In this document: one piece after another, positions 10,261 to 62,720 of the stretch | How the letters are laid out: each line of letters opens with the position of its first letter | How positions within the stretch are numbered: the stretch's first letter is position 1 | NCBI RefSeq assembly: GCF_001194135.2 | Contig: NC_068986.1 | Coordinates: 105,825,730-105,889,675 of the forward strand | Length of the DNA: 63,946 nucleotides | Direction of reading: 5' to 3' | Source: Octopus bimaculoides | Lineage: Eukaryota | The notes under the pieces: model-generated | What the model was told of the DNA's origin: nothing | Databases searched by the model: none | What the model saw: the letters and a program-made list of their open reading frames with translations, nothing else | Program-made: the position numbers and the translations under genes

Positions 10261-10271
10261 ACGGACCAAAT

Positions 10272-12180
10272 CTGTGGTTGGTACATTAGAGCAAAGAAAC
10301 AGGCCTAGAAGGCCTGGAAAAGTGGGGGTAGCAGGAGACTGAATCAGATAGGCAAAAGGGAAGCTAGGAGACAGGTATATATAGCCAAGGGAGTAGCAGA
10401 AGTTTACTAATGCTCAATGACATGAGGACCAAAGAACTGAAGTATTTTGGATTGTAAGACAGTATGTGAGAGAAAACAGTGATGTCATAGAGAAATGTGT
10501 CCGCATGGATGATGGTATGGTGCCCTTGCGTTTAATGATTCTGCAAAGAAAGAGGCTTGGAGATGCCATTATGAAAGATTACTGAATGTGGAGAATGAAT
10601 GGGAGGAGGAGAGTCTGCCAAAGGTTGACCCAATTGAGGGACCAGCTACCCGAATCGACAGTACCCTGGTAGATAAAGCAATTAACGATATGAAGACAAG
10701 AAAAGCACCTGACCCATCAGGAATCACTGCTGAGATGCTTAAAATATTGTGTGGTGTGGGTTATGGTCTTGTCACTCACATCTTAAATCTGGTAGTTCAC
10801 GAAGGAATCATACCCAATGACTGGTGTAGCAGCACCATAGTCAACTGTTATAAAGGTAATGGTGATGCTTTAGACAGAAATAACTACAGGGTATCAAATT
10901 ATTGGATCAGGTGATGAAAGTTACAGAGAGGGTCATAACCTAACTAATTAGGGAGAGAGTTAGCCTAGATGAGATGCAGTTTGGTTTTGTGCCAGGGAAA
11001 AGCACCACTGATGCTATATTTCTGGTCAGGCAACTGCAGGAGAAATATCTAGCCAAAGATAAACCTCTGTACTTGGCTTTTGTTGACTTGGAGAAAGCCT
11101 TTGACAGGGTCCCCCAATCCCTTATCTGGTGGTCAGTGCGGAAACTGGGGATAGACGAGTGGTTGGTAAGAGGTGTACAAGCCCTGTGCAAGGATGCAGT
11201 CAGTAAGTATAGTGAAGAATTTTGGGTAGAAGTAGGGGTTCACCAAGGATCAGTTCTCATCCTCCTTCTTATTCATTATAGTCCACCAGACAATAACAGG
11301 AACTCAAGACAGGCTGTTAGCTCCTCTATGCTGATGAACTTGCTCTAATAACCAAGTCACTGCCAGAACTAGAGATGAAGTTTAAGGTGTGGAAGCAAGG
11401 TCTAGAATCGAAGGGCCTTAGGGTTAACCTAGCAAAAACCAAAGTCTTAGGAAGTAGGAAGGCTACCAAATCACAAACCCCTTCAGGTAGATGGCCCTGC
11501 TTGATCTGTAGAAAAGGCATGGGTTGAAACTTCACACGATGTACCTGGTGTAAGCTATGGACACATAAAAGGTGCAACAATATCAAAGGAAGGTTACCTG
11601 GGAAGATGTTTTTTTTTTTTGTGTGTGTGGCAGATGCACAGGGGCAATAAACACTGAAGAAGTACAGAAAACAGATTTCATCACATGCCAAGGGGAAAAA
11701 CTAGATGTAGTTGATAACTTCTGCTCCCTAGGCGACCAAGTCTGTAGTGGGGGTGGCTGCTCTGAGAGTGTAGTGGCTAGAATAAGAATAGCCTGGGCAA
11801 AGTTTAGAGAGCTCCTACTTCTGCTGGCAACTAAAGGCCTCTCGCTCAGGATGAAAGGTAGAATGTATAATGCATGTGTGTAAACTGCCATGTTACATGG
11901 CAGTGAAGCATGGGCCATGACTGCTTAGGACATGCGTAGGGTTGAAAGAAATTAAGCTAGTATGCTTTGCTGGATGTGTAATGTCAGTGTGCATACACGA
12001 CGACTTGTAAGTGCCCTGAGAGAAAAGTTGGACATAAGAAGCATCAAATGTGGTGTGCAAGAGAGACGACTGTGCTGGTATTGTCGTGTTACGTATGGAT
12101 GAGGTCAACTGTGTGAGGAAGTGCCACACCCTGACTGTGCAAGGAACCTGTGGAAGAGGTAAACCCAGGAAGACATGGGA
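10272..12180 (+). mobile_element. Decayed RTE LINE ORF2 (RT domain, PHD-like insert, C-terminus), with frameshifts and stops
   Basis: KAPDPSGIT, YKGNGDALDRNNYR, QFGFVPGKSTTDAIF..RQLQEKY, AFVDLEKAFDRVP, GVHQGSVL, GLRVNLAKTK, GTCGRGKPRKTW. Confidence 0.92.
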
Positions 12181-29377: not shown

Positions 29378-32300
29378 AAGAACCAGTTAGTTAAGTACTG
29401 GGTGTGATTTAATTGACTATACTTAACCGTCAAAATTAGTGGCTTTAATGAATTCCCTCTTCCTTTATCTTACTTTCTCACTTCTTTTCCTCTCCTTTCC
29501 AACTGAGGCATCCATGTATCTACTCTACAGCCAGACCCCCTATATCTGCCCTCTCTATACCTTAAATTTCTCATCAACTGGCACAAAACCACACCCTGTC
29601 AATACTACTCCCTACCTTCTTAGTTGAGGCGTTTTGTCTTGTAAGGTACTTGGTGATTCTGTTGGTGATGGGACCATGTAAAAAAAAAAAACACCCTACA
29701 CACTCTGTAAAGCGGTTGCTGTTAGGAAGTGCCCTTAGAACCTATTCTGAAACAGACGAGTGGAGTCTGGTGCCGCCTTCCATTTTGCCAGCTCCTGTCA
29801 GACCGTCCAACCCACACTAGCATGGAAAACGGATGTTCGATGGTGATGATGACCAACTAAGTATTTGGTGTGACTTAATTGACTGTAGTTAGCTTTCGAA
29901 ATTTACGGCCTCTGTGAATTATCTACATGTGTTCCCTGTTGATATAACTAATCCCCTTTATGTGTCTTGTTTTATACAGACGGTCGAAATTGAAATTGAG
30001 AAAGGAAGACCATCTGAGAATGATTCACCAGTTACAACATCTACATCATCTAATGTCTCTTGCGCAACTAAAACTCAAGCCCCTGTTGCGGGAACCCAAT
30101 CCCAAGATTCTGGTGAAAGGACCCAAGATTCCAGACTGAACTCTAATGGTGTCACATCATCATCTCCAAGTGAAATAGTTTCTGCTGTAAACCCCAAAGT
30201 TGCAACAGAAAAGGAAAACACGACTGTTAGCGAATTAAAGAAGGAACTAGTGTTGGATTCCTCGAATGTCAAAAATGGTGTGTTGCCCAGTGATACAACA
30301 AAATCGCCAAGTAAATTGAAAGTATACAAATTAACCGTTGGTAGTTCCTCGTCAACAGTTAACGAAGTCCCTCTGTGTTTACTGCCAGAAAACTCTGAGA
30401 GTTTTTCTCTTGCCAACAGCACCTCTACTCCATTGATCACATCTGCAGTTTCTGGCAGTGATGCAAAAGTGACATGCACAGCAGCAACACCACCAATAAT
30501 AACAACAGCAGCAGCAGCAGCGATGACTATAACAGCAGCATCACCAGTGATAACAAAAACTGCTACACCAGAGACAACAATAATTGCATCACCGGCAGCA
30601 TCATTAACAACAACAACAGCAACATCATTTACAACTATAACACCAGCACCAGCACCAGTTGCAACAATAACACCTGTGACGTTGGCTACAACAACAACAA
30701 CAACAGCCACAAATCTAACAAAACCTGTTATTTCTTGTAATACTACCCTTCCTTATTTTGTCACGTTGACCTCACTTCCCAGCTCTAAGCTACCAATTCC
30801 TGTTGCTGCTGTTCCCGTCGCTGTGTCCAAACAAAAATTTGCTGCTGTTGCATCGACGACGACAACAACAACAGCAAGTTCCACCAGTATTGTTGGATCG
30901 ACAGCAACAACTGCCACAATAACAACAGCAGCCTCTGTATTGCCTGCTACCGCTATTTTAGCACCAAAACCTGCGAATCTTCAAGGAGCAGCACCGGTTC
31001 CTATGAAGGTTCAAAACTTGCAGAACCTTCCTCTCAACACTCTGCTGAAGTGTCTCAACAACCAAGGTAAAGTGCTCTTAATGTCACAACCTCTAGTTGG
31101 TAAATCAACGACATGTCTGCCCGCGAGTGCTTTAGTCTCGTCACAAACTAATACTGCATCTCCAGTCTCTGCAACAGTTACAAGTTTGCTTCACAGCAAC
31201 TCATCGTCTGTCACCACAACAACATCAAGCACCAAACCTCCTATAACTATTTCAAAACCTTTCCTAACGAATGATGCTATTAAGAAGGTCCCCAATAACA
31301 TTGATGTTCGATCACTTGATAGTAGTAGTGGTGCTACTAAAACATACACAATTCAATTGGGTTCAGCTTCTAATTTACCAGAAGTTTCTGGGCAGAATGA
31401 TTCTGTCTTAAAAGATAAAGCTAATCCCAAAAAAGAAAACACACCAGTTATCTCCCCATTCCGAGTAACTTCAAAAGGTTTGATTTCCATTCCAAGCAGC
31501 ACAGTTGGGGTGTGTTGGTCATCACCTGTCACTGTTCAGTCTTCACTTTCACAAATAAATAAGCCAAATCCAGTTGCTTCTCATACCTTGCTCAGTATGG
31601 GTTCATTGTCTCAATCCAACGTTTTGCCAACGTCTCTCATGTCCCTGTCTTCTAAAGTGCCAACCACAACAAATACTTCTGTAATATTATTATCCTCTTC
31701 ACCAGTCAACAAGAACACTTCCCTTCTTGCTGCTAGCTCACCTGTAAAGAAAACTATAACTCAACCAGGGATTTTCATTCCGACTGTGACACCTGGTGTC
31801 GTTCGACCCCTTGTCAGCGAAATCAAAAGTACACCAGGCAAATCTTCCCTTTTGCTTCTCAGTTCAACAACGAGTGGCCTAAATAAGGGACCTATTGTGA
31901 CAGGTAACAAAATTCTTCAAAGCTCTCCTTCTGTTATGAACAGTGTTTCAGTTTCAAATACTTCTGGTACGACCACCCCCATACAACCTTTCATCTTGAG
32001 CTCCAGTAATTCTTCAATCAGTCCTGCTGCTACACGTCTTCCTCTGATGTCACAGAGCACTCCAGTGATAAATGTCGGTATGCAAAATGTGAAAACTCTA
32101 GCGAGATCTGGAGAATGGCGACAGCCAGTTAGGTGTAATCTAGTGACTAGTAGTTCTACACTTCAAACATTGCCTTCAACTTTCAGCACAGGGAAACAAA
32201 CCTATGTGTTAACAACCACACGAAATAAGGGTCTGTCTCTGTTACCTTCACATCTCTTCTTGAAACCCAATACAGAAACGAAACCAGATGCCTGTCAGTC

Positions 32301-35300
32301 ACTTCTTACAAAATCTTCAACTTCCAACATGAACACTACCCAGCCTGTTTTGTCTGGCATTGGGTCAACACCTAATACTGTGGCTACCACATCTGGTAGT
32401 TTATTGAACACACCTAGACCTATGCTGTTGCTTAAGAATCCAAACAAGACTGCAATGATTGTTACACCTGTTAATAACTCTACCATGCCAACAGGTAGAA
32501 TTTGGCCATCTGCATCGGTTGCAGAGAAACCTGCCAACAGTAATATTACAAGCAGCCAAGAAGGGGCAGGCACCAATGTTTCTCTTCAGGTACAATATTC
32601 AAATGGTAATCTGGTCCTGGCCCCACCATCTGGCTTTGGTAACAACAGCTTATCACAGAAAGTGCTTCTTAAAGTAATACCGTCCACTTCAACATGTAAC
32701 CCATCTTCTGTAAGTAGTTTACCAAAGAGCAGTAACGGAACTGTCTCGCTCAGCACTGTAACTACAACTGTTAGCTCTACCACCTTTCCCAAAACAACAT
32801 CTGTGATTACCAAACAGGTGAGACCAACTGTATGTGAGAAAAAGATCCATGGTTACAATAAAGCCAAAAAAATCCAACCAGTTAATATCTCAGTTCCTTC
32901 AATCAAGTAAGAATTTCCCATTATTTTTCAATTATGTTTTTTATTTGTTATGTTTTTATTTAAGCAGGTACATGTGCGGTTAAGAAGTAGGAACCTTGCT
33001 ACTTACTTCCCAACCTTGTGGTCTTGGGTTCAGTCCCATTGTGTGGCACCTTCAGTTTAGTGTACTGGAGTCCCAGACCACAATCAAAGCCTTCTGATTA
33101 AATTTAGTTGGCAAAGACTGAACGAAACATCTGTGTGTGTGTGTGTGTGTGTGAGTTGTTGGTGTTGGGAAGGGCATCTCCAGCTTTAGAATCCCTACCT
33201 AAACGGATGCAGCAGCCTAGGATAGTTTTTCTACCTGGCTGGCTTCTGTCAGCTGCATGGAAGATGTTACATGAAGGACATGATCTTGGTAGTGGTTGGT
33301 TCATCATGAAATGACTTCAGTACCTAACTTTGATCAAGTAGGAAAGGCACTTTTCATTTTCCTAACAGCTTTAACTAAAATCTCTTGTGTGGTGGAAGAG
33401 GCTACAAAAGTCTCGAGACAGATGCTTTCCTCTTTGGTTAAATCACCATCAAATTTTCCAAGTTTCACTCGAAAGGGATGCTGAACAGGGAGAAAAAAAG
33501 TGGCTTCCTTTAGTGAGTTTGTTAAAAGGTGGGTGACTGTGGTGAAAATGGTTAAGAGTCTATGGAAGTGTTCTGTGTTTGTATCTGTGGGTCAGAGAAC
33601 AACAGTTGAGAAGAGGTCAGGATATCTTGTCTCTGTGGAGTTCTTTAACTGATCCTAGTTGGAGATCGTCTTCTCTCAATCCAAAAGATTGTACCATCTA
33701 TATATTTCTATACTACACATGCGCAGGAGTGGCTGTGTGGTAAGTAGCTTGCTTACCAACCACATGGTTCCGGGTTCATTCCCACTGCGTGGCATCTTGG
33801 GCAAGTTTTTTTCTACTATAGTCTCTGGCCGACCAAAGCCTTGTCAGTGGATTTGGTAGACGGAAAACTGAAAGAAGCCCGTCATATATATGTGTTTGTC
33901 CCCCCAACTTCGCTTGACAATTAATGCTGGTGTATTTACATTCCCGTAACTTAGCTGTTCGGCAAAAGAGACCAATAGAATAAGTACTAGGCTTCCAAAG
34001 AATAAGTCCTGGGGTCGATTTGCTCGACTAAAGGCAGTGCTCCAGCATGGCCGCAGTCAAATGACTGAAACAAGTAAAAGAGTAAAGAGTATGCTCTGTT
34101 ATCATATCCATCTTCTGTAAATTTGCTCACTTTATAGAATGTGTCTCTGTACTGTTATCTTCCTCTTATACCCCTCTGGCAAATAAAAGAAATTATCATC
34201 TCATTATTTTCCATTCTATTTGTTTTTTGTTTTACTTATTTAGCTTCAATGCATTAACCGACATGATGTCAGTCATCCGAGCTGTAGTCCGTCTGCACCC
34301 ACTGGTCAGTGAAGGTGTTGACCGTTCTCTACATCCATATGCAACGGATACTGTTGAACAATGGCTGTCTTGGAATATAGGCAAGAGAAGGGCATCAGAA
34401 GTAAGATAACACTTTTGTTGGTTGTTTTTTTTTTCTTCTTTTCTCTTATTACTAAGAATCTTCTTTGTGATCATAGAATTTGAAGCAGAAGTTTTGTAGA
34501 AGGATGTCAGTCCTACCAACATTATAGATTTGGAAATGGTCACTTAGTAATTATCCTTTTGTATTTTGGTATAACTGGAAAACTAGATTGGTGGATTGCT
34601 TGTGGTCATTCACCTGATCACCTGATTGTAATAGGTCAGCTTGAGTAGAGCTGTCTGGGTGTTATATAACAGCGCTACTTAAACGTTTTTTATTCATGAC
34701 CCTACTTTTCATCACGGGATTTTTCATGACCCCAGCTATTGAATATGAAATAAAACATACAAATAAATACATAAATCATTAATTTTTTTTGCTGAACAAT
34801 ATACATATAAAAAAAATGGAGTTATATTATTTGTCAAAATAAAAGTGGTTTTAGGATTTGTGCATTTGTGAAATTACATATAAACTGAAATTCAAAACTG
34901 TTTTGAATATAATTTTCGTGATCCCAACATTTCGCTTTGCAGCCCCATTTGTTGTTGCGACCCATAGTTTAAGAAGTGCAGTTATATGACAATAACTCTT
35001 TTTACAATTACTTAAGTATAATTTTTTGGGTATTAATTAGTATAAGGCGAGCTGGCAGAATCATTAGCACACTGGGCAAAAATGCTTGGCAGTATTTCGT
35101 CTGCTGCTACGTTCTGAGTTCAAATTCTGCCGAAGTTGATTTTGCCTTTCATTCTTTTGGGGTCGATTAAATAAGTACCATTTGTGCACTGGGGTTGATG
35201 TAATTGACTCAATCCCTTTGTCTGTCCTTGTTTGTCTCCTCTATGTTTAGCCCCTTGTGGGCAATAAAGAAATAAATATTTAGTGGCATTTTGTCTGTCT

Positions 35301-39358: not shown

Positions 39359-41411
39359 AAATGTGGCGAGCTGGCAGAACCGTTAGCACGCTGGACAAAA
39401 TGCTTAGCGGCATTTTGCCTGTCGCTACGTTCTAAGTTCAAATTCCACCGAAGTCGACTTTGCCTTTCATCCTTTCGGGGTCAATAAAATAAGTACCAGT
39501 TGTGTACTGGGTCGATCTAATCGATTCATCCCCACCTCCCCCCAAGCTGCCCTTGTGGCAAAAATTTGAAATATTTATTATTGTTTTTGTTCTTGTTTTC
39601 TAGTGTATGGAAAATATAATGTCTGACATTCTGAGGACAGCTTTTGCCTTGAAAAGTGAAGAAGGAAGGTAAAAATCATTATTTATTTATACACTTTTCT
39701 TCTGTCGACTTCTTAAAAGTTGTTCCATCTATCTCAGTCTCTGCCAAACATCAGGTCGGTAGGATCTGATTCTCTTCAAACTTAGAAGATTGTATTCAGC
39801 GAGGGAAGAAGTTCATTTTGATATCTTGCTTCTCACCTGTAAGCTGTTCTGTCTGTTGTAGCAGGTAGTGCCAATTGCATCCTGATCAAGCAGACCAATG
39901 GCATACAGAAAGCCAAATGGCTGGGTAAAATCCATAGATTTATAACAGCAGATAAATAATATGTCTGCTGAGCTGATGATCTTGCTGTGCACTTCAAAAT
40001 GCTGTGCTTATTCATGTTGGATTCAGTGTAACAGTTCGTACTTGTGCTCTCTCCGTTCTCCATTTTTTGTACTGTCTGTAGATTCTGGACGTGCGTGCTA
40101 AGGTTGCCTTGGCCAGCGCATACCAATCACTGTTCCTCTCTGGAGATGTTTATCCCAAAAACAGTTACAAAGGTTATTAAAGCTTCTGTCTTATGATTGT
40201 CTGGAGACTGAGTAGGAGAAATGGCACCCCATGAATTGGACCCATGCTGGCACCACATAAAAGTACTTGTACACTGTAAAGTGGGTGGCGCTGGCATGGG
40301 CAGCCAGTCCTAGAAACCGTGTCAAAACAGATGATTGGAGCCTGGTGTAGCCGTTTGGTTTATTAGCTCTTGTCAAACCATCCAACCCATGCCAGCATGG
40401 AAAACAGATGTTAAATGAGGAGGATTGTCATAGTGTAAGGTGGTGGTCATCACTTATCATTTTAATGTCCACTTTCCTTTGTGTGCATCGGTCACACAAT
40501 TTGTTGAGACAAATTTTCTCTAACTGGACGCCCTTCTGTCACCAACCCCCACATGTTCCCATGTAAAGTGTTATTTGCTCTTGGCCAAACATTGTTTACA
40601 CTGAAGATTTGACACGAAGAACAAAGCTTGTGTGATTATGATGCTCATTTACAACTATTACAGTAATGTGAAGACGAGTAAAATACTAAATTCTTCGTTA
40701 TTTAAAAAAAATTAATTGAAACAAAAGCAGTGTACATTATTTACAGTGGACGGATAGGTGTCCTAGTCTTGTTTGTTGCTATCACAACGTTTTGGCTGGT
40801 GTACTCTCCAGCCTTTATCAGGTGTTCTGGTGGAATTTTGAACCCAGCCCTTTATTTGACTAATGAGGTACACTATTCTCATTCCTAAGGTATGTTGTTG
40901 ATATTACTTTCCTGTTGATATTACTTTTAAGTCCCTGCCTGGGATTTAACTTAGAATCCGGGTGTTAGTAGCCCGCGCTCTCATCCACTACACTATATGC
41001 CCATGGGCATATAGCGTACATAATTCCTCATGTCAAAAATATAGAATAAAAGCAGTGTATTTCAATGAAAATATGGTAACAAAAGGACTAAAGAGTCCTA
41101 GTAAGGCTACACTTCTCTGACAGAAAAACTATTTCTCTTTGCAAATTTTGCTTGAAGTATAAGGTGTGATGTGTTAGGTCTAAAAGCAACAGTTATATCC
41201 TTATAAAAGAGTACTTTAATGCAATCACTTTCGTATCTCCTTCTTTTACGACAGGTATCCAACAGAGCTTTCCTTGCAAGATATCCACAAAGCATTGACT
41301 AGTATACCAGCTTGTGACTTCTTGACCAATTCTAATCTCGGTCTTGTTGTAGACTCCGACCACACTCAACCTTCAGTTGACCACAATAAAGAGAAACATG
41401 GTATTACCTGA
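12674..41411 (+). CDS. YEATS2: YEATS domain-containing protein 2 (ATAC complex acyl-lysine reader), full gene: join(12674-12767,15074-15171,17889-17981,20047-20259,22739-22836,24368-24529,25748-25859,28397-28441,29980-32906,34244-34400,35758-35902,37230-37409,37520-37638,39208-39282,39604-39668,41255-41411); 4740 nt, 1579 aa
   Basis: Manual splicing gives one open frame with GT-AG junctions and matching phases. Recognisable YEATS2 motifs occur in order: [36 protein letters not shown], the YEATS domain, [23 protein letters not shown] and the C-terminal DFLTN. Confidence 0.95.
13029..13560 (-). mobile_element. RTE LINE 3'-UTR fragment with a (GAT)n tail. Further copies at about 13655-13835, 17100-17475, 18750-18910, 19085-19420, 20990-21420, 22880-23130, 23190-23600, 27540-27830, 29690-29850, 36740-37085, 38390-38615, 40240-40420, 57035-57200, 60400-60510, 62930-63000
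   Basis: The recurrent catcatcatcgtttaacgtccg...ggatgcccttcctaacgccaacc block is contiguous with the RTE ORF end at 49345-50170. Confidence 0.85.
14230..14665 (-). mobile_element. SINE family A, two tandem copies
   Basis: Two successive gatgaaaggcaaagtcgacc...gaaataccgctaagcatt blocks. Confidence 0.8.
15074..15171 (+). CDS. YEATS2: YEATS2 coding exon 2 ([32 protein letters not shown])
   Basis: tttacag acceptor, gtaagt donor, phase 1 to 0; coiled-coil region similar to vertebrate YEATS2. Confidence 0.9.
15211..15587 (-). mobile_element. tRNA-headed SINE family B (head ggcgcaggagtggctgtgtggtaag), full length
   Basis: A/B-box-like head, CORE-like ccttgggcaagtg block, internal (TA/TG)n and conserved tail; matches the copies at 33721, 35978 and 55288. 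Confidence 0.88.
16177..16554 (+). mobile_element. SINE family C, full length
   Basis: tRNA-like head ggcgcaatggcccagtg..ggtttcgattccc followed by the shared body. Confidence 0.85.
16570..16920 (-). mobile_element. Old LINE (RTE-like) ORF2 fragment
   Basis: Degenerate [19 protein letters not shown], resembling the post-RT FKYLG..F..DG..E.EI motif. Confidence 0.45.
17889..17981 (+). CDS. YEATS2: YEATS2 coding exon 3 ([31 protein letters not shown])
   Basis: Poly-T tract plus gcag acceptor, gtaaat donor, phase 0 to 0. Confidence 0.9.
18341..18660 (-). mobile_element. Chimeric SINE: family C 3' body with a different tRNA-like head and CORE-like block
   Basis: The 3' ~170 nt matches family C; the 5' ~150 nt does not. 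Confidence 0.75.
20047..20259 (+). CDS. YEATS2: YEATS2 coding exon 4 ([22 protein letters not shown]...ELGQK)
   Basis: tttgttcag acceptor, gtaaga donor, 213 nt, HPAVKKYL motif. Confidence 0.88.
21711..22280 (-). mobile_element. Non-autonomous Tc1/mariner element retaining a transposase C-terminal remnant
   Basis: 27 bp TIRs (21711-21737 and 22254-22280, 2 mismatches), TA on both flanks; internal [23 protein letters not shown]...[12 protein letters not shown]. Confidence 0.88.
22739..22836 (+). CDS. YEATS2: YEATS2 coding exon 5 ([33 protein letters not shown]), start of YEATS domain
   Basis: taacacag acceptor, gtaaga donor; [16 protein letters not shown] matches the YEATS N-terminal strand. 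Confidence 0.92.
24125..24350 (+). mobile_element. SINE family A with an (ATT)n tail abutting the YEATS2 exon 6 acceptor
   Basis: Head ggcgcgcgagctggcagaa, central block, tail gaaaggattattatt. Confidence 0.85.
24368..24529 (+). CDS. YEATS2: YEATS2 coding exon 6 ([53 protein letters not shown])
   Basis: Core YEATS motifs THKW and FxLHPSY; donor gtaagt at 24530. Confidence 0.97.
25748..25859 (+). CDS. YEATS2: YEATS2 coding exon 7 ([37 protein letters not shown])
   Basis: PPF and GWGEF aromatic-cage motif; tcttcag acceptor, gtaagc donor. Confidence 0.97.
26860..27195 (+). mobile_element. SINE family B
   Basis: Matches other family B copies. Confidence 0.8.
27891..28049. repeat. Perfect 67 bp inverted repeat with a 25 nt spacer
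   Basis: 27891-27957 is the exact reverse complement of 27983-28049. Confidence 0.95.
28397..28441 (+). CDS. YEATS2: YEATS2 coding exon 8 ([15 protein letters not shown])
   Basis: ttctag acceptor, gtgagt donor; matches the YEATS2-specific [15 protein letters not shown] segment. Confidence 0.95.
29047..29312. repeat. Perfect 59 bp inverted repeat with a 148 nt spacer (left arm starts at an N gap)
   Basis: 29047-29105 is the exact reverse complement of 29254-29312. Confidence 0.92.
29980..32906 (+). CDS. YEATS2: YEATS2 coding exon 9, 2927 nt, about 975 aa S/T/P/A-rich low-complexity region
   Basis: tttatacag acceptor in frame with ORF 29914-32910; donor gtaag at 32907 (phase 2) joins exon 10 in frame. 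Confidence 0.88.
33721..34090 (+). mobile_element. SINE family B, full length
   Basis: Matches other family B copies. Confidence 0.88.
34244..34400 (+). CDS. YEATS2: YEATS2 coding exon 10 ([21 protein letters not shown]...[13 protein letters not shown])
   Basis: WNIGKRRA motif; tttag acceptor, gtaaga donor. Confidence 0.94.
34670..34981. mobile_element. hAT (Charlie-like) MITE
   Basis: Ends cagcgctacttaaac ... gtttaagaagtgcag; 8 bp TSD ttatataa / ttatatga. Confidence 0.7.
35045..35330 (+). mobile_element. SINE family A
   Basis: Head, central block and tail, followed by a partial second head. Confidence 0.8.
35758..35902 (+). CDS. YEATS2: YEATS2 coding exon 11 ([12 protein letters not shown]...[18 protein letters not shown])
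   Basis: WQRA and WCRxHxYTP motifs; aaatcag acceptor, gtaagc donor. Confidence 0.93.
35978..36360 (+). mobile_element. SINE family B, full length
   Basis: Matches other family B copies. Confidence 0.88.
37230..37409 (+). CDS. YEATS2: YEATS2 coding exon 12 (EKQLQQLQ...[19 protein letters not shown]...VDVISR)
   Basis: Of the nearby AGs, the acceptor tctcttgtttag (ends 37229) is the one that preserves phase; donor gtaatt at 37410. Confidence 0.8.
37520..37638 (+). CDS. YEATS2: YEATS2 coding exon 13 ([40 protein letters not shown])
   Basis: ccttaatag acceptor after a 110 nt intron, gtaaaa donor; KIKKE and YLP motifs. Confidence 0.87.
37797..38171 (+). mobile_element. SINE family C with a (CAA)n tail and a 15 bp target-site duplication
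   Basis: TSD atagatctagtttgt (37782-37796) / atagatctagtttat (38172-38186). Confidence 0.92.
39208..39282 (+). CDS. YEATS2: YEATS2 coding exon 14 ([25 protein letters not shown])
   Basis: ccctcag acceptor, gtatgt donor; start of the C-terminal histone-fold-like region. Confidence 0.88.
39298..39357. repeat. (ATT)n microsatellite
   Basis: Directly visible. Confidence 0.9.
39365..39570 (+). mobile_element. SINE family A
   Basis: Head ggcgagctggcagaaccgttagc and central block. Confidence 0.8.
39604..39668 (+). CDS. YEATS2: YEATS2 coding exon 15 ([22 protein letters not shown])
   Basis: ttttctag acceptor, gtaaaa donor; DILR motif. Confidence 0.87.
39760..40140 (-). mobile_element. Old RTE/BovB-like LINE C-terminal fragment
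   Basis: Degenerate W..LA....W and C..C...F....GL.SH-like remnants; heavily decayed. Confidence 0.35.
40781..40826 (-). ncRNA. Minimal type I hammerhead ribozyme-like motif, family 1 (Penelope-type), degenerate
   Basis: AACAC-CUGAUAA-A-GGCUGG(8)CCAGCC-AAAAC-GUU-GUGAU; G8 and G12 are mutated. Confidence 0.55.
41255..41411 (+). CDS. YEATS2: YEATS2 coding exon 16, terminal ([51 protein letters not shown])
   Basis: ttttacgacag acceptor; IHKAL...IP..DFLTN motif; TGA at 41409-41411. Confidence 0.92.
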
Positions 41412-42688: not shown

Positions 42689-44714
42689 TGCACACACACA
42701 CACACACATTTATACACATGATTCTGTGTATTTATATGAAGTGAATATTGTTTTGAGGATTGTATATCACCAATGAGTATGTCTAAAACAGAGAAACGTA
42801 CCTATTTCTAACATTTAATGCTTACACTAAATTCAGACCCTTTCATTTTATGCATCACTGCTCAAATAAAACTTAAAACTTGTCATTGAACTTCCACCTG
42901 GGATTGAACCTTAAATCTAAGGTTTCCAAATGACTCTACTGTAGCTATTAGACACTAATAACTCTTGATCCCGACTTTAGATATTATCTGTAGTTTACCT
43001 GTTGTATGGCGAGTATTATAGAGTAAGAAGTAAGCTTCTGTGTTTGATTCCTGATTTCAGCTAAATCAATGCATTTCCACTAATAATAGTGGTGAAGAAG
43101 TCATGAACATCATTTAGTCCCAGACATCTCCCTGATAAATTTGTGGCCTTCTGTCTCCTGGGTAAAACTATGCTTGGCCTTGATCCACTCTTTCAGGTGG
43201 ACATATATAGACATATACATATTTGTATACATGTGTTTGTTTCGAGTTCAAATTCCGCTAAAGTTGACTTTGCTTTTCATCCCTTTCCTGGGAGTTGATA
43301 AAATAAGTACCAGTTGATTACTGGGGTCAGTGTAATCCCTGAAATTGCTGGCCTTGTGCCAAAATTTGTAACCAATATATTCATGTATATACATACATAT
43401 ACAGATATACAAACACACACACACACACACATACATCTTGACTTGGCTTCGTGAGTGAAGATTTACGGTGGGGTTTGTCCATAACTGTTGCAGGTTTGTT
43501 GGTGCCCAACAAGTCTGTTTCAGAGCAAACGGGCACAGCCAGAGAGGGCTGCGTGAGAAGATAGGCTGATCAGGGCTGGTTGTAATGTCCTTGTTTTTCC
43601 TCCTTTTTTTCTCTTGTCTGCAAGCATGGTCCTGTAAGATATCTTCAAAGGAGAGAAGCTGACTGAATGACTTGAAACATTTAAATTTCTAGCATTTGGC
43701 TATCAATTGAAAACCCCATTTAGAAGAAGGGCTGGGGGTACAGTTATGATTTTTCATCCTCCAGTGGATTAAAACAACTGTTTGTAAGACACTTGTGTAT
43801 ATTCAATGAACCTTATTTCTCTCTCTAGAAACAAACAAAATAAAAAAAAATGAAATAAATAAACAGTTGGCCTTGTATCAAATCAAAAGAAAATACATGA
43901 AATCTTTTAATAACCACAACACAGCAGTTTATTTACTGCCTGCACTGAAAGACCCTCCCCCCTACCCCAAATGCTTGTTATTAATGTGATATTTATGTGT
44001 GTAAGTGTGAATGTGTATATTTGTGTTCAGCATGCAATATCCTTACTTTGAAAGCAAGTATCTGTTCCCACACAGTTCAGAATTTTCACCCCCCCCAATA
44101 ACTAAACTGATATTTTTCAACTACGGCACCTAATAAAAAAATAAAAAAAGTGAAAATAAAGTTGGTATAGTTATTAATTTCTAATGACTTTTTGGTTATT
44201 TCTTTTTAATTACATTTTTCAGTTGTTACACTGTGGTCATGATGGAGCATCGATTTGAAGAAGTTTTAGTTGAATCGATCTCAGTACTTTTTTTTTTTTT
44301 TTTAATCCCAGTTCTTATCTTATCAGTTTCTTTTGATGCACTGATAAGTTACAAGGACACAAACACAGCAGCACCAGTTGTCAAATGGTAGCAGGGAACA
44401 AATACACACACACACACACACACACAATAGGTTTCTTTCAGTTTCCATCTACAAAATCCACTCTCAAGTTGGCTTGAGATTATAGTAGAAAACACTTCTG
44501 TAAAGTTCCATAAAGTGGGACTGAACCTGGAACCCTGTGGTTAGGAATATATATGCACACACATAGGTCTTTTGGTTTTCATCTACAAAATCTCACAAGG
44601 CTTTGGATGGCCCTACAATGTAGTAGACTAAATATGAATTGGTAGGTAGTCGATATATATATATATATATACATACACATTTAGGCTGACACAGTTTATA
44701 TGTATATTCTTTTC

Positions 44715-49344: not shown

Positions 49345-50170
49345 ATATCATCATCGTTTAATGCCTGCTTTACATGGGTTGGACACTCCGAGAGTGTAGT
49401 GGGTGCTTTTACGTGCCACCGTCATGAGGGCCAGTCAGGTGGTACTGTAGTGTTTTTTATGTGCCACCTGCACAGGAGCCAGTCCAGCGGCACTGACAAC
49501 AACCTCGCTCGAATGTTTTTTTCACGTGCCAGTAAGACAATGCTGGTAACGAGCACGTTCGAATGGTACTTTTTGTGTGCTGCCGGCACAGAAACCAGTC
49601 AGCTGCTCTGGCAGCGATCACACTCAGATGGTGCTGTTTGCACTCCACTGGCACGGGTGCCAGTCATCGAATTTGCGAATTTGATTTGACTTTGATTTCA
49701 CTTGCCTCAACAAGTTTTCGCAAGCAGAGTTTAGTGTCCAATGAAAGAAAGGTACGCATATGTGGGCTGGTTACACCCCTGGCATAGGCCACGTATTATG
49801 GTCTCACTTGGCTTGCCGGGTCTTCTCACACACAACATATTTCCAAAGGTCTCAGTCGCTAGTCATTGCCTCGATGAGGCCTAATGTTTGAAGGTCATCC
49901 TTCACCACCTCATCCCAGGTCTTCCTGGGTCTACTTCTTCCACAGGTTCTCTCAACCGCTAGGATGTGGCACTTTTTCACACAGCTATCCTCATCCATTC
50001 TTGCCACATGATCATACCAGTGCAGTCGTCTCTCTTGCATACCACATCTGATGCTTCTTAGGTCTAACTTTTCTCTCAAGATACTTACACTCTGTCGAGT
50101 ATGCACACTGATATTACACATCCATCAGAGCATACTGGCTTCATTCCCTGCGAGCTTACGCATGTCCTCA
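49345..50170 (-). mobile_element. RTE LINE 3' end: ORF2 C-terminus, 3' UTR and (GAT)n tail, contiguous
   Basis: LREKLDLRSIRCGMQERRLHWYDHVARMDEDSCVKKC...GRSRPRKTWDEVV runs directly into the abundant 3'-UTR repeat. Confidence 0.88.
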
Positions 50171-51299
50171 GCAGCTTACATATATTTATTTGTTTGCCTG
50201 ACAGGTAGTTAGAAACAGTGGTACTTGTGATAGTGAAAGCTTTTTTTGGCAGTGACAAAAAGGTTGCTGTCTGCCAGTAGAGAGGGAAAGAGTAAGTTTT
50301 GATCGACTAAACTCTTCATGACTGTGGCCCACCATGGTGACTGCAGTCTTATAACTTTTTACAACAAATTTTCTTTAAAAAAACATCTTTAAATGACGGT
50401 CTGACCGTCTGCCAAGTAAATGGGAAGCAGTAATTGAAGTAGATGGTGAATATGCTCCAGAATAATCATTTAAAGATGTTTTTGATACATATTATAGTTT
50501 TTGTTGAATAAAATTTGTTGAAAAAAGCCGCAATAATTATGCACCAACCCAATATGTATATTAGTCTGACAGTCTGTTAAAGTCTGTCATACCGGCCATG
50601 ATGAAATACCACAAGGTATAGAAAATACGTATTCGCCTTTATATTGAACACTCAATATTTCATCTATTCAATAAGACATTCAATACTTTATTTCATTGTA
50701 CCATCCATTTTTATTTTATATTGTATATTATATTATATATTGTATATTCCATATTCTATATCCCACATTGGTTTTGCAGGAATATAAATAAAACATAAAA
50801 AAACAGACAGTGTTGGAACTCTTTTAAACAAAATAATATATTCCTCTATACACAATCATACAAAACCCCTTTTTTTGTATTTATTTTTACTCGCATATAT
50901 ATATATATATACATATATCGGCAGCAGCGTTTAATCGTGTGCCCGATAATTTATTTGGTTTCTTCTTGACCACTTCTTCCCCTCTGTCCTTATTTATGCC
51001 TCTGATGACTAATGAGGCCGATTGTTGCATGGAAGCATCTCTTGCAAAGTTCACAGGGGATCCGTGGTGGAGGCTTTGGTTGTTGCAGCCTCCATTTTCT
51101 TTCTTGTCGTTTCTCTTCCTCTGTCATTCAGCTTCAAAATGATTTATCACAATGGGGTTGGAATGATGCCAGCTTGGCCTGTCCTGATCTTCAATGTCCT
51201 AGGCTTTGGGATCAATTCCAGCCAGTTTTAGGCTTTGCTTCAGATGATCCTTGTATATATATATGTATATATATGGGAGAATATACAAATAATAACAAC

Positions 51300-51822
51300 A
51301 GACGAGAGAGAAAAGCTGAACATTAGAAGCATCAGTTGTGGCGTGCAAGAGAGACGATTGCGCTGGTATGGACATGTGGTGAGAATGGAGGAGGATAGCT
51401 GCGTGAAAAAGTGCCACACCCTAACAGTTGAGGGAACCCGTGGAAGAGGTAGGCCCAGGAAGACCTGGGCTGAGGTGGTGAGGCAAGACCTTCGTACATT
51501 GGGCCTCACCGAGGCGATGACTACGGACCGAGACCTTTGGAAATGGGCTGTGCGTGAGAAGANNNNNNNNNNNNNNNNNNNNNNNNNNNNNNNNNNNNNN
51601 NNNNNNNNNNNNNNNNNNNNNNNNNNNNNNNNNNNNNNNNNNNNNNNNNNNNNNNNNNNNNNNNNNNNNNNGTTGGCGTTAGGAAGGGCATCCAGCTGTA
51701 GAAACTCTGCCAAATCAGACTGGAGCCTGGTGTTGCCATCCGGTTTCACCAGTCCTCAGTCAAATCGTCCAACCCATGCTAGCATGGAAAGCGGACGTTA
51801 AACGATGATGATGATGATGAGG
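51300..51822 (+). mobile_element. RTE LINE 3' end (young-looking copy, spans an N gap)
   Basis: REKLNIRSISCGVQERRLRWYGHVVRMEEDSCVKKCHTLTVEGTRGRGRPRKTWAEVV, then the 3' UTR and (GAT)n. Confidence 0.9.
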
Positions 51823-51879
51823 ACAGGTGGTGTGAATAACAAAAGTATATATTAGTATGACGCTCGGGAATACGGAAAG

Positions 51880-51916
51880 TCTTTGACGTTTCGAGCTACG
51901 CTCTTCAACAGAAAGA
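51880..51916 (-). ncRNA. Minimal type I hammerhead ribozyme-like motif, family 2, near intact
   Basis: UCUUU-CUGUUGA-A-GAGC(GUA)GCUC-GAAAC-GUC-AAAGA: perfect helices I and II and a GUC triplet; the only core deviation is U at position 6. Confidence 0.6.
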
Positions 51917-52019
51917 ATACGGAGACAAGGAGAAAAACACGGAGAAAAAAAATTGAATAGTGTTCAGTCAACGGTCAATCATGTTATGATTGACCATTAT
52001 CGGCCATTATTATGATTGG

Positions 52020-52285
52020 CAAGGGATGGTGGCGAACTCTGCTGTACTCTTTCACCACAACTTTCTCTCACTCTTACTTCCTGTTTCTGTTGTACCTGCA
52101 TTTCAAAAAAGAACCAGGCTTGTCACACAATGTGTCATGCTGAATCTCCCCAAGAACTATATTAAGGGTACACGTGTCTGTGGAGTACTCAGCCACTTAC
52201 ATGTTAATTTCATGAGCAGGCTGTTCCATCGATTGAATCAACTGGAACCCCCGTCGTCATAACTGACTGAGTGCCACAACAACGA
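52020..52285 (+). mobile_element. SINE family C, 5'-truncated
   Basis: Matches the body of 37797-38171. Confidence 0.8.
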
Positions 52286-52606
52286 TACAGACACAAACAC
52301 ACACATTATATGATAGGCTTCCATATAGTTTCTGTTTACCATATTCACCCACAGAAGGAAATACTTGCTCAAGGTGCAGAACAGTAAGACTGAACTTGAA
52401 AACATGTGGTTGCAAGGCAAGCTTCTTAGCCACACAGCCATGCTTGCATCGAAACTAACTTTCTTTTTTTTTTTTTACAGATTATCCCATGTTCAACATC
52501 TGAATATAATGTAATTAATATATCAGAGATACCAACATAATCTGGAGATAATCTTTCATTTTTCAACGAGATTTTACCATTATTGTTTACAAAAGCACTT
52601 TAGAAA

Positions 52607-53014
52607 ATGACTTCAAATGAATATGACTTTTTCCTACATTTTTCAAAGGAAGATTATGAAACAGCAGAGGAAGTACTACACATTTTAGAACAAGAATATC
52701 CGCATAGAAAGTTGAAAGGCTATATTTGTGACCGAGATTTTGACTGTATTGGCAGCAAATTCGAATTAGATGAGGTAATAAAAGACATAGATATCATCTT
52801 TGTTATTTTCTCACAAAATTCTGAAAGAGATAAAGAATTTATGTATATGAATAGTCTAATAATGAAAATTCATTTAGAAAATGAAGAGACAAAAAAAACA
52901 ATACCTATCTATATTGATGAAGATGTAGTAGACAAATGTATTTTCAAAACTCTGCAAGGAATTAATTATAACAGTAAGAACTTTTTGTCAAAAATGAAAA
53001 CGATCTTTCGTTAA
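52607..53014 (+). CDS. TIR-domain-only protein, 135 aa, single coding exon
   Basis: Box1-like YDFFLHFS, box2-like ICDRDFD-IGS, beta-C IFVIFSQNS, beta-D TIPIYID and box3-like NFLSKMK. An in-frame TAG sits two codons before the ATG. An upstream branch point CTAAC (52455), T-tract and acceptor (ends 52480) indicate a spliced 5' UTR. Confidence 0.85.
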   Translation: MTSNEYDFFLHFSKEDYETAEEVLHILEQEYPHRKLKGYICDRDFDCIGSKFELDEVIKDIDIIFVIFSQNSERDKEFMYMNSLIMKIHLENEETKKTIPIYIDEDVVDKCIFKTLQGINYNSKNFLSKMKTIFR

Positions 53015-53142
53015 AATCATGCATTTTAATGTTTTTTATTTGTGACTTTCAGCATTCAGATGGCTCTGGAAATGTGAAATGTGAAATTCGTAAATCTCTA
53101 ACGAACAAAACAAGTCAAGAGATAATATTGGTGTTAGGTGGA

Positions 53143-53610
53143 AGGCGGCGAGCTGGCAGAGTGGTTAGCACGCCGGGCGAAATGCTTAGCGGTATTTCGT
53201 CTGCCGTTACGTTCTGAGTTCAAATTCCGCCAAGGTCGACTTTGCCTTTCATCCTTTTGGGGGTCGATTAAATAAGTACCAGTTACGCACTGGAGTTGAT
53301 ATAATCGACTTAATCCCTTTGCCTGTCCTTGTTTGTCCCCTCTGTGTGTAGCCCCTTGTGGGCAGTAAAGAAATAAGAAACTATGAGGGCGGTGAGCTGG
53401 TAAAATCATTAGCACACTGGGCAAAATGCTTGGCAATATTTCGTCTGCTGCTACATTCTGAGTTCAAATTCTGCCGAAGCTGATTTTGCTTTTCATTCTT
53501 TCGGGGTTAATAAATTAAGTATCAGTTACGCACTGGGGTCGATATAATCGACTTAATCCCTTTGTCCCCTCTGTGTGTAGCTCCTTGTGGGCAGTAAAGA
53601 AATAAGAAAC
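53143..53610 (+). mobile_element. SINE family A, two tandem copies
   Basis: Two complete head-to-tail units. Confidence 0.88.
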
Positions 53611-54374
53611 TCAAGTTACAAAGTAAGAAACCAGTATATTCTACATATATATATATATATATATANNNNNNNNNNNNNNNNNNNNNNNNNNNNNNNNNNN
53701 NNNNNNNNNNNNNNNNNNNNNNNNNNNNNNNNNNNNNNNNNNNNNNNNNNNNNNNNNNNNNNNNNNNNNNNNNNNNNNNNNNNNNNNNNNNNNNNNNNNN
53801 NNNNNNNNNNNNNNNNNNNNNNNNNNNNNNNNNNNNNNNNNNNNNNNNNNNNNNNNNNNNNNNNNNNNNNNNNNNNNNNNNNNNNNNNNNNNNNNNNNNN
53901 NNNNNNNNNNNNNNNNNNNNNNNNNNNNNNNNNNNNNNNNNNNNNNNNNNNNNNNNNNNNNNNNNNNNNNNNNNNNNNNNNNNNNNNNNNNNNNNNNNNN
54001 NNNNNNNNNNNNNNNNNNNNNNNNNNNNNNNNNNNNNNNNNNNNNNNNNNNNNNNNNNNNNNNNNNNNNNNNNNNNNNNNNNNNNNNNNNNNNNNNNNNN
54101 NNNNNNNNNNNNNNNNNNNNNNNNNNNNNNNNNNNNNNNNNNNNNNNNNNNNNNNNNNNNNNNNNNNNNNNNNNNNNNNNNNNNNNNNNNNNNNNNNNNN
54201 NNNNNNNNNNNNNNNNNNNNNNNNNNNNNNGTTTATTGCTCTGTGCTTGGTCTCCTGGTTTAAATAAACTCAGCTTCACTGAGTGGACAAAACCTTCCAC
54301 AAATATCAAAACATTGACAGATCTCAGATTTTTCTCATCAGTCAAGCAGCTGAAGACAGCAATGCTAATGTTGC

Positions 54375-54461
54375 TTACATGCACTGCAGAGGTTGGACAC
54401 CAATCAGTCTGAGCCCACTTGAAAGGATCTGTTGGGCTGAATGAAACAGCAGAAGACGTGC
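54375..54461 (-). CDS. RARS2: RARS2 terminal exon (ARLLLFHSAQQILSSGLRLIGVQPLQCM*)
   Basis: Long pyrimidine tract plus cag acceptor; typical ArgRS C-terminus; TAA. Confidence 0.95.
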   Translation of the reverse strand, partial: ARLLLFHSAQQILSSGLRLIGVQPLQCM

Positions 54462-61983: not shown

Positions 61984-62271
61984 CTAGAGGGGAATAATGT
62001 AGAATAATTAGAACTAATTATTGTCATCATTAACACCTATTTTCCAGTGTCTGCTTTGGCATGGCTTCTATGACTGAATGCCATTTACAACCACTTTATA
62101 ATGTGTACTGGGTACTTTTTATGGATACCAGCATGACACTAAACACTCTCATGATTACCATTACCAACACCACATCTCTTTTAATTGCTATTCTCTACTC
62201 TTCTCCTTGTACCTATAGTAGAAAGGATTATCATTATTATAATTATTGTTGTTGTTGTTGTTATCATTATT

Positions 62272-62463
62272 AGGCGGGGGGTGAGCTGGCAGAATTGTTA
62301 GCACGTCGAGTGAAATGCTTAGTGGCATTTCATCTGTCTTTACGTTCTGAGTTCAAATTTTGCCGAGGTAGACTTTGCCTTTCATCCTTTCAGGGTCGAT
62401 GTAATCGACTTGTCACCTTCCCAAATTTCAGGCCTTGTGCCTATAGTCAAAAGGATTATTATT

Positions 62464-62495
<32 letters not shown>

Positions 62496-62720
62496 GGCAG
62501 TGAGCTGGTAGATTTGTTAACAGGCTGATCGAAATGCTTAGCAGTATTTTGGCTGCCACTACATTCTGAGTTCAAATTCTGCTGAGGACAACTTTGCCTC
62601 TCATCCTTTTGGATTTGAAGAAATAAGTACCAGTAATGCACTGGAGTCGATGTAACCAACTAGCCCCCCTCCCCTCAAAATTTTCAAGGCTCTGTGTCTA
62701 GAGTAGAAATGGTTATTATG
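62272..62720 (+). mobile_element. SINE family A, two tandem copies separated by (ATT)n
   Basis: Two head plus central block units. Confidence 0.82.

What the first reader, a model, noticed from the sequence alone, without database searches (positions are those of the whole stretch)
52607..53014. Stand-alone TIR protein lacking both the BB-loop proline and the catalytic glutamate
Seen: a 135 aa ORF that is essentially one TIR fold, with no LRR, transmembrane or death domain exon visible between YEATS2 and here. Aligned by eye to TLR TIRs, box 2 reads DRDFDCIG (no Pro of DF.PG), the alpha-C segment SQNSERDKEFMYM has Met where S.NF..S.WC..E has Glu, and box 3 has FL instead of FW. Established: the BB-loop Pro is needed for MyD88-type adaptor recruitment, and the alpha-C Glu for SARM1, plant and bacterial TIR NADase activity. 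Inference: a non-catalytic decoy or inhibitor, or a novel adaptor, inserted as a compact gene between two housekeeping genes; the reading frame is intact.
Basis: partly seen in the sequence, partly recalled or inferred. Interest (0 to 1): 0.7.

Follow-up and report, generated by a model that had tools for sequence, protein, structure and literature searches.

The report
Cephalopod-specific stand-alone, non-catalytic TIR gene
This is a real, small octopus gene that encodes only a TIR signalling domain without the enzyme residue; it belongs to a small uncharacterised family shared with cuttlefish, and it is a fairly ordinary kind of invertebrate immune-adaptor-like gene.

Summary
The 135-codon ORF at 52607-53014 (+) is real. 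It is single-copy in its genome. Octopus sinensis has an intact 135-aa ortholog (81% identical) in the same place, between YEATS2 and arginyl-tRNA synthetase.

The protein alone falls below Pfam's TIR cut-offs. A profile of its family matches solved TIR domains (MyD88 TIR, E 7e-10), and the AlphaFold model superposes on TIR structures (TM 0.75).

All three motif observations hold:
- No BB-loop proline (C47 at that column).
- Met81 where NADase TIRs and octopus TLRs have the catalytic Glu.
- FL instead of FW in box 3.

The stand-alone reading also holds. The CDS exon begins at a splice acceptor (52479-80). Its 126-nt leader is closed in all three frames. A Sepia homolog shows the same structure directly in spliced versus unspliced contigs.

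The gene belongs to a small family of 130-139-aa TIR-only proteins (8 clusters among 5.8 billion). The family forms its own clade, apart from MyD88 and TLRs, and is linked to the YEATS2 3' end in another cephalopod. So it is ancient, not a recent insertion.

MyD88 also lacks the Glu and several octopus TLRs lack the Pro, so neither loss is exceptional. The most likely function is a non-enzymatic modulator of Toll/MyD88 signalling. This is untested.

The parts
52430..52480 (+). Probable intron 3' end: polypyrimidine tract and AG acceptor (AG at 52479-52480)
   Evidence: The sequence is ...CTTTCTTTTTTTTTTTTTACAG|ATTATCCC. High conservation with O. sinensis begins here. A Sepia homolog has the same arrangement, shown by spliced versus unspliced contigs.
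52481..52606 (+). 5' untranslated leader of the coding exon (126 nt), with two conserved mini-uORFs (52489-52503 MFNI*; 52509-52514 M*) and an in-frame TAG at 52601-52603
   Evidence: Stops occur in all three frames. Identity to O. sinensis is 94%, against 87.5% for the CDS.
52607..53014 (+). CDS of the 135-aa TIR-only protein (P0001), stop codon included
   Evidence: The O. sinensis ortholog XP_029638187 is 81% identical with no indel.
52622..52642 (+). Box 1 / beta-A (Y6-D-F-F-L-H-F12); D7 and F8 are invariant in the family
52730..52756 (+). Box 2 / BB loop, D42-R-D-F-D-C-I-G-S50. R43 and D44 are invariant; C47 (52745-52747) sits in the proline column
   Evidence: Alignment A5. Model pLDDT is below 50 at residues 46-49.
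52847..52849 (+). Codon of M81, the alpha-C position that holds the catalytic Glu in NADase TIRs and in octopus TLR TIRs
   Evidence: Alignment A5. The alpha-C helix is residues 76-91 in the model.
52982..52987 (+). Box 3, F126-L127 (FW in the decapodiform homologs and in human MyD88; AW in octopus MyD88)
53015..53137 (+). Conserved 3' flank, probably the 3' UTR. It is followed by SINE-like repeats that are present at the same place in O. sinensis
   Evidence: Identity is 93% over about 120 nt with two small indels.
41255..41411 (+). Last coding exon of the upstream neighbour YEATS2 (...KHGIT*, stop at 41409-41411); the start coordinate is approximate
   Evidence: It coincides with the end of the O. 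sinensis 1594-aa gene. The YEATS-domain exons are at 24315-24533 and 25632-25928. The same exon lies 9 kb from homolog P0004 on contig L003.
54375..54509 (-). Last coding exon of the convergent downstream neighbour, arginyl-tRNA synthetase (end of the DALR_1 domain, stop at 54375-54377)

Best explanation
The locus is a functional gene with at least two exons. Its last exon (from 52481) carries the whole CDS of a 135-aa cytosolic protein that is a single TIR domain and nothing else. It is the octopus representative of a small, fast-evolving TIR-only family shared by octopuses and cuttlefish, so probably coleoid-specific. This family is a separate lineage from MyD88 and from the TLR TIRs.

The protein lacks the alpha-C catalytic glutamate, as MyD88 does, so it should not cleave NAD+.

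Inferred mechanism (not shown here): it acts through TIR-TIR contacts with Toll/TLR and/or MyD88 TIR domains. It has no death domain or other effector module, so it cannot recruit downstream kinases itself. It would therefore most likely attenuate or tune Toll signalling, as a competitor or capping subunit of TIR assemblies. Less likely, it bridges receptor and adaptor.

The octopus lineage has diverged further from the family consensus (BB-loop register, FW to FL, loss of the family's alpha-C Glu at +2), so its partner specificity may have changed.
For: Shown:
- The ORF and its TIR nature.
- Single copy in the genome.
- An ortholog with the same neighbours in O. sinensis.
- Purifying selection: dN/dS 0.35-0.57, and 27 amino-acid differences against 36.9 +/- 2.8 expected neutrally, P = 0.0006. 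There is no indel in 405 nt, while both flanks carry indels.
- The leader is closed in all frames.
- The homologs are all 130-139 aa and all TIR-only.
- The Sepia esculenta homolog is found in RNA-seq with a spliced non-coding 5' exon.
- YEATS2 linkage is conserved.
- The family clade has 98/98 support, apart from the MyD88 clade at 99/99.
- The catalytic column holds M/V/K/Q in the family and Q in MyD88.

Established knowledge, not tested here: the alpha-C Glu is required for SARM1, plant and bacterial TIR NADase activity, and TIR-only fragments of MyD88 act as dominant negatives.
Against: - No expression data for the octopus gene itself could be reached.
- No interaction or activity data exist.
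- The single sequence is below Pfam's cut-offs.
- The CDS (87.5% identity) evolves faster than its own UTR-like flanks (93-94%) and only slightly slower than intergenic DNA (79-85%), so constraint is weak.
- Interface motifs that are conserved in decapodiform members are lost in octopus. That could mean loss of the ancestral partner rather than a tuned decoy.
- Whether the effect on signalling is negative or positive is pure inference.
Confidence: 0.6

Rival explanations
1. It is a positive bridging or sorting adaptor, functionally like MAL/TIRAP or TRAM. It nucleates the assembly of MyD88 TIR on particular Toll receptors rather than inhibiting it.
For: TRAM and MAL TIR filaments are among the best structural matches (9dlg TM 0.72, 5uzb TM 0.72). 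These mammalian adaptors are also small, non-catalytic proteins that consist mostly of a TIR domain.
Against: The 135 residues contain no membrane-targeting N-terminus, whether lipid-binding motif or conserved myristoylation site. The BB-loop Pro and Gly register used in MAL/MyD88 strand contacts is altered.
Confidence: 0.2
2. In octopus the gene is decaying, or is a neutrally drifting relic of the coleoid TIR-only family. The open frame would be retained by chance.
For: - Pfam scores are sub-threshold.
- Family-conserved motif residues are lost.
- The octopus stem branch is long, at 1.63 substitutions per site.
- The CDS is less conserved than its flanks.
- 10% of simulated neutral histories keep the frame open.
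- A decapodiform member scores as well against an octopus TLR as against this gene.
Against: - There are significantly fewer amino-acid changes than neutral expectation (P = 0.0006), and dN/dS is below 1 by four methods.
- The CDS has no indel, although both flanks have them.
- The core TIR residues are invariant (D7, F8, R43, D44, S69, F78, P100, Y102, F126).
- The fold prediction is confident.
Confidence: 0.08
3. It is one exon of a larger multidomain receptor or adaptor whose other exons lie upstream or in the N gaps.
For: An AG lies at 52602-52603 just before the ATG. There are N gaps at 51563-51671 and 53666-54230. At least one upstream exon must exist.
Against: - The leader from 52481 is conserved at 94%, which suggests it is exonic, and it is closed in all three frames, with an in-frame TAG at 52601.
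- O. sinensis has no such gaps, and its product is annotated as 135 aa.
- No domain hit was found in plus-strand ORFs upstream.
- Sepia mRNA contigs read continuously through the equivalent region and carry stops.
- All eight family clusters are 130-139 aa.
Confidence: 0.03
4. It is an active NAD+-consuming TIR that uses a non-canonical acidic residue, for example E77 one helical turn before M81.
For: The best Foldseek E-value is to the NADase AbTir (7uxu, 3.6e-5). E77 lies on the same face of alpha-C, at position i-4.
Against: The canonical column is Met. Both human and octopus MyD88 also have Glu at the E77 column and Gln at the catalytic column, and MyD88 is not known as an NADase (established knowledge). 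E77 is not conserved in the family, where the column reads R/W/W/W/W/W.
Confidence: 0.03

Closest known systems
MyD88 TIR domain (human structures 4dom, 7beq, 8w8m; octopus MyD88 at G000:C6:44.24 Mb)
   Same: - It is the best sequence match in the PDB for the family profile (E 7e-10 over the full length).
- It gives the best TM-score (0.75).
- Both have the DRD core of box 2, and both lack Glu at the catalytic column (Q in MyD88, M here).
- The domain length is similar.
   Different: - There is no death or intermediate domain.
- There is no BB-loop Pro (octopus MyD88 keeps DRDVIPG).
- The CDS lies on one exon, against three TIR exons in octopus MyD88.
- It falls in a separate, well-supported clade.
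- Octopus MyD88 scores lower against the family HMM than an octopus TLR does (32 versus 40 bits).
Toll/TLR TIR domains of the same octopus genome (for example G000:C29:8713651 and the cluster at C3:48.03-48.20 Mb)
   Same: Their similarity to the family is comparable to that of MyD88 (40.4 and 34.7 bits). Some of them also lack the BB-loop Pro.
   Different: The TLRs are ORFs of about 700 aa or more (ectodomains were not scanned here; L023 shows LRR-CT, TM and TIR). They keep the WCxxE glutamate and the box-3 FW.
Uncharacterised cytosolic TIR-domain-containing (TIR-DC) proteins of molluscs
   Same: They are small intracellular proteins built around a TIR domain, lineage-restricted and of unknown function. 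The literature notes that their diversity and roles in invertebrates remain elusive (PMC10279657, read, citing Gerdol et al. 2017).
   Different: That work centres on bivalves, and no paper found here describes this cephalopod family. This family has only one or two genes per genome rather than an expansion.
TIR-only inhibitors and dominant negatives (the MyD88 TIR fragment and MyD88s, SIGIRR/TIR8, bacterial Tcp proteins)
   Same: They have a TIR domain without a signalling effector module. Altered box residues are typical of SIGIRR. The proposed mode of action is competition at TIR-TIR interfaces. This comparison rests on recalled knowledge, not on a test.
   Different: No homology beyond the TIR fold was shown, and no functional data exist.
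NADase TIRs (SARM1, AbTir, plant TIR-only proteins, ThsB)
   Same: They share the fold. AbTir gives the best Foldseek E-value, and TIR_2 is the best Pfam model.
   Different: The catalytic Glu is replaced by Met.

Membership tests
TIR domain superfamily (Pfam TIR PF01582 / TIR_2 PF13676) | Score above the Pfam gathering threshold | tested here: not met
   P0001 scores 22.5 bits on TIR_2 (cut-off 28) and 18.3 bits on TIR (cut-off 21.3). The ortholog scores 27.6 and 18.8 bits. The homologs P0003 and P0004 pass both models.
TIR domain superfamily (Pfam TIR PF01582 / TIR_2 PF13676) | Profile-level homology to solved TIR domains | tested here: met
   The family profile matches MyD88 TIR at E 7e-10 over positions 5-133, and 52 distinct PDB sequences, nearly all TIR chains, at E up to 1.
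TIR domain superfamily (Pfam TIR PF01582 / TIR_2 PF13676) | Flavodoxin-like alternating beta/alpha TIR fold | tested here: met
   The AF2 model has pLDDT 75.8 and strand/helix order bA-aA-bB-(BB)-aB-bC-aC-bD-aD-bE-aE. The top 50 Foldseek hits are all TIR domains at probability 0.99-1.0, with TM up to 0.75.
TIR domain superfamily (Pfam TIR PF01582 / TIR_2 PF13676) | Boxes 1-3 | tested here: inconclusive
   Box 1 (YDFFL) and the RD of box 2 are present. The Pro of box 2 is absent. Box 3 keeps F, but W is replaced by L.
NAD+-cleaving TIR enzymes (SARM1 / plant / bacterial type) | Catalytic glutamate in alpha-C | tested here: not met
   The column that holds E in octopus TLRs and in the bacterial TIR P0007 is M81 in both octopus species.
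NAD+-cleaving TIR enzymes (SARM1 / plant / bacterial type) | NADase activity | not testable with these tools
   This needs an enzyme assay.
MyD88 | N-terminal death domain and intermediate domain before the TIR | tested here: not met
   The protein is 135 aa, TIR only. The leader has stops in all frames, and no death-domain hit lies upstream.
MyD88 | Groups with MyD88 TIRs in a phylogeny | tested here: not met
   Human and octopus MyD88 form a 99/99 clade that excludes the family, which has 98/98 support.
Toll-like receptor | LRR ectodomain and transmembrane helix | tested here: not met
   No such segment is in the ORF or in upstream plus-strand ORFs.
Cephalopod TIR-only family (defined here: P0001-P0004, P0011-P0014) | 130-139 aa TIR-only product, CDS on one exon behind a 5'-UTR intron, locus next to the YEATS2 3' end | tested here: met
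   The clade has 98/98 support. Gene structure was inferred for octopus and shown for Sepia. YEATS2 linkage holds in the window, in O. sinensis and in contig L003.

The most novel reading that the evidence does not exclude
The gene family is a coleoid-cephalopod innovation that supplies a dedicated, non-enzymatic regulator of Toll signalling. In octopuses the single remaining copy has been remodelled at exactly the surfaces used for TIR strand assembly (BB loop, box 3, alpha-C). It would thus have become a new kind of capping or decoy subunit, or have switched to a non-Toll partner. The unusually conserved uORF-bearing leader and 3' UTR would then point to tight post-transcriptional control.
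Probability: 0.15. Interest if true: 0.5.

Novelty: new member of a known kind. Interest (0 to 1): 0.3.

Why it matters
Cephalopods have the smallest and least varied TLR repertoires among molluscs (PMC10279657), and their Toll pathway has hardly been dissected. A lineage-restricted TIR-only gene conserved from octopus to cuttlefish is a cheap, well-defined candidate regulator of that pathway. It is only 135 aa, its CDS lies on a single exon, and it would be easy to express. It also adds a data point on how non-catalytic TIR modules arise and drift. It does not overturn anything: TIR-only proteins without the catalytic Glu are common in animals.

Tried and rejected
- P0001 alone against PDB sequences gave only chance coiled-coil hits. 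The family profile was needed.
- An exact look-up of P0001 in public assemblies and transcriptomes returned nothing, so there is no direct expression evidence for the octopus gene.
- I considered a recent MyD88 duplicate or retrogene, because MyD88 was the top PDB hit. I rejected this because an octopus TLR scores equally well and the tree separates the clades.
- I looked for a second, more canonical paralog in the octopus genome with decapodiform queries and found none.
- I looked for RARS next to the homologs on contig L003/L009 and did not find it within the 43 kb available. Only the YEATS2 last exon was found.
- tRNA and Rfam scans of 50-55 kb gave nothing.
- Searching papers for run accessions identified only one (SRR20545806, Sepia esculenta). 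The species behind ERZ21867824 and the other runs remain unknown.

Full report
**1. The observation**

The plus strand carries an ATG at 52607 and a TAA at 53012-53014. This gives a 135-codon frame, preceded by an in-frame TAG at 52601-52603. The sequence is 28% G+C, and none of 20,000 shuffles stays open.

**2. Is it a TIR domain?**

On its own the protein is below Pfam's curated cut-offs: TIR_2 scores 22.5 bits against 28, and TIR scores 18.3 against 21.3. It also finds no solved structure by sequence.

The wider evidence is clear, however.
- The O. sinensis ortholog and the distant homologs hit the same two models, and most pass them.
- A profile of six family members matches the MyD88 TIR domain over its whole length (E 7e-10) and about fifty other TIR chains.
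- An AlphaFold2 model (pLDDT 75.8, pTM 0.74) retrieves only TIR domains from the PDB at probability about 1.0. The best TM-scores are 0.75, to the MyD88 and TRIF TIR filaments, and the best E-value is to AbTir.

The fold assignment is therefore sound.

**3. The three motif claims**

I aligned the family with three octopus Toll/TLR TIRs taken from the same genome, with human and octopus MyD88, and with a bacterial TIR_2 domain.
- The proline column of box 2 (DRDFVPG in an octopus TLR, DRDVIPG in octopus MyD88) is C47. No Pro occurs anywhere in residues 42-52.
- Box 3 reads FL, where the relatives have FW.

All three observations hold.
- Every member of the family lacks the Pro (T, S, A or Y at that column), and so do several octopus Toll/TLR TIRs (DRDFLVG, FRDFEVG, DRDFVVG).
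- MyD88 itself has Gln at the Glu column in both human and octopus.
- E77 in DKEF sits one helical turn before M81, and MyD88 has a Glu at that column as well. In the family the column is not conserved. It is therefore no sign of hidden catalysis.

**4. Stand-alone or part of something larger?**

Alignment with O. sinensis shows that strong conservation starts abruptly at a polypyrimidine tract followed by CAG|ATTATCCC. This places an exon start at 52481. The 126-nt leader between that acceptor and the ATG has stop codons in all three frames, so no upstream exon can extend the protein through this junction.

Further points agree.
- O. sinensis, whose assembly has no gaps here, is annotated with a 135-aa product under two accessions, XP_029638187 and XP_029638188.
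- Plus-strand ORFs between the YEATS2 stop and the gene have no LRR, death or other domain.
- A 130-aa homolog (P0014) was recovered from many sequencing runs, one of them a Sepia esculenta juvenile RNA-seq run. For this homolog, some contigs read ...TTTCTATAG|ATGAAAAGC... (unspliced). Others join a different upstream sequence at exactly that point, 83 nt before the start codon, with in-frame stops.

The family therefore has a 5'-UTR intron and a CDS that encodes only a TIR domain. Use of the AG at 52602-52603 cannot be formally excluded for octopus, but nothing supports it.

**5. Conservation and selection**

The gene is single-copy in its 2.3-Gb genome.

The O. sinensis ortholog is 81% identical in protein and 87.5% in DNA, with no indel. 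dN/dS is 0.35-0.57 depending on the method. The 27 amino-acid differences are significantly fewer than the 36.9 +/- 2.8 expected from 51 random substitutions (P = 0.0006).

Constraint is nevertheless modest.
- The leader (94%) and the 3' flank (93%) are more conserved than the CDS.
- Intergenic DNA between the two species is 79-85% identical.
- 10% of neutral simulations keep the frame open.

This is a fast-evolving but selected gene, not a pseudogene.

**6. The family**

Three searches of 5.8 billion clustered proteins and one exhaustive HMMER search of 1.84 billion representatives were run. They found only eight clusters in the family, all 130-139 aa and all TIR-only.

The members fall into three groups.
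- The two octopus sequences.
- Group A (P0003, P0011).
- Group B (P0004, P0012, P0013, P0014).

Groups A and B are 37-40% identical to each other, and the octopus proteins are 24-30% identical to either. P0011 and P0004 lie in tandem, 23 kb apart, on one 348-kb contig.

That contig also carries the last coding exon of YEATS2. It is 64% identical to the octopus exon, has the same ...KHGIT* end, lies 9 kb beyond P0004, and is convergent with it. In the window, YEATS2 ends at 41411 and the TIR gene follows on the same strand. Linkage to the YEATS2 3' end is thus conserved, while the orientation differs.

A maximum-likelihood tree groups the family with 98/98 support. It lies outside the MyD88 clade (99/99) and the TLR groups, with an unresolved octopus/A/B trichotomy and a long octopus stem. 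The family HMM scores human MyD88, an octopus TLR and octopus MyD88 at 41, 40 and 32 bits. It is therefore a signalling-type animal TIR, but not a MyD88 derivative.

The canonical octopus MyD88 lies 61 Mb away on the same chromosome. Its TIR is split into three exons, and it keeps the BB-loop Pro.

**7. How it most likely works**

Shown here:
- The product is a lone TIR domain with the core residues intact (D7, F8, R43, D44, S69, F78, P100, Y102, F126 are invariant).
- It has no catalytic Glu.
- It has no effector or membrane-targeting module.

Inferred: it participates in the cooperative TIR-TIR assemblies of the Toll pathway. Since it cannot recruit downstream kinases, it most likely attenuates or tunes signalling by competing for or capping receptor/MyD88 TIR strands. 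A bridging role like MAL or TRAM is the main alternative.

The octopus proteins have lost features that the decapodiform members keep: the Gly register of the BB loop, the box-3 Trp, an alpha-C Glu two residues after the canonical column, and the NGGF(K/R)GF segment. This argues for a change or relaxation of partner specificity in octopods, which retain one copy instead of two.

I put about 0.85 on the identity statements and about 0.4 on the attenuator mechanism.

**8. Comparison with what is known, and verdict**

The gene belongs to the broad, already recognised category of uncharacterised cytosolic TIR-domain proteins of molluscs (PMC10279657). No paper found here describes this family. The O. 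sinensis copy is annotated only as an uncharacterised protein.

It is a new member of a known kind. Interest is modest: the missing Pro and Glu are normal for this class, and the gene is old rather than newly inserted.

Noticed in passing
window 52481-52606 and 53015-53137: The UTR-like flanks of the gene are more conserved between O. bimaculoides and O. sinensis (94% and 93%) than the CDS (87.5%). Two mini-uORFs (MFNI* at 52489, M* at 52509) are conserved. The Sepia homolog's coding exon also opens with a uORF. This may point to post-transcriptional control.
   Followed up: partly
window 53138-53375, 53380-53604; also about 62270-62655 and 43238-43328: SINE-like repeats (GGCGAGCTGGCAGA..GTTAGCACGCCGGGCGAAATGCTTAGCGGTATTTCG...GAGTTCAAATTCCGCC) lie in tandem directly after the 3' flank and are present at the same site in O. 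sinensis. ARAGORN and Rfam call nothing there.
   Followed up: partly
window 50561-52432: O. bimaculoides has about 1.9 kb here that O. sinensis lacks (about 30 nt between the matching blocks). The stretch contains an N gap (51563-51671) and a retroelement-like ORF fragment (...RRLRWYGHVVRMEEDSCVKKCH...). Similar fragments occur elsewhere in the window, for example 49852-50124 on the minus strand and 10002-10304 on the minus strand.
   Followed up: no
L003:19383-19556 (-) versus window 41255-41411 (+): In the other cephalopod contig the TIR genes are convergent with YEATS2, whereas in octopus the TIR gene follows YEATS2 on the same strand. This is a local inversion of the TIR gene(s) relative to YEATS2.
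   Followed up: partly
G000:C3:48030982-48200133 (L015-L017): Three single-exon TLR-like ORFs cluster within 170 kb. One of them has an in-frame TAA in its TIR region and is a possible pseudogene.
   Followed up: no
G000:C3:149747786 (L021): One long ORF gives two separate TIR-like matches to the family HMM (aa 335-414 and 499-588 of the locus translation). It is possibly a twin-TIR receptor, like the molluscan 2TIR subfamily mentioned in PMC10279657.
   Followed up: no
G000:C29:8713645-8713950: The decapodiform family member P0004 is slightly more similar to this octopus TLR TIR (43 bits, 33% identity) than to the window's own gene (39.8 bits, 27%). This illustrates how far the octopus copy has drifted.
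   Followed up: partly
window 29893-32910 (+): A single 1005-codon open frame, very rich in Ser, Thr, Ala and Pro, is presumably the giant low-complexity exon of YEATS2. The opposite strand carries long spurious ORFs.
   Followed up: no
window 53015-54377: The TIR gene and arginyl-tRNA synthetase are convergent, with only 1.36 kb (565 of it N) between their stop codons. Their 3' UTRs may abut or overlap.
   Followed up: no
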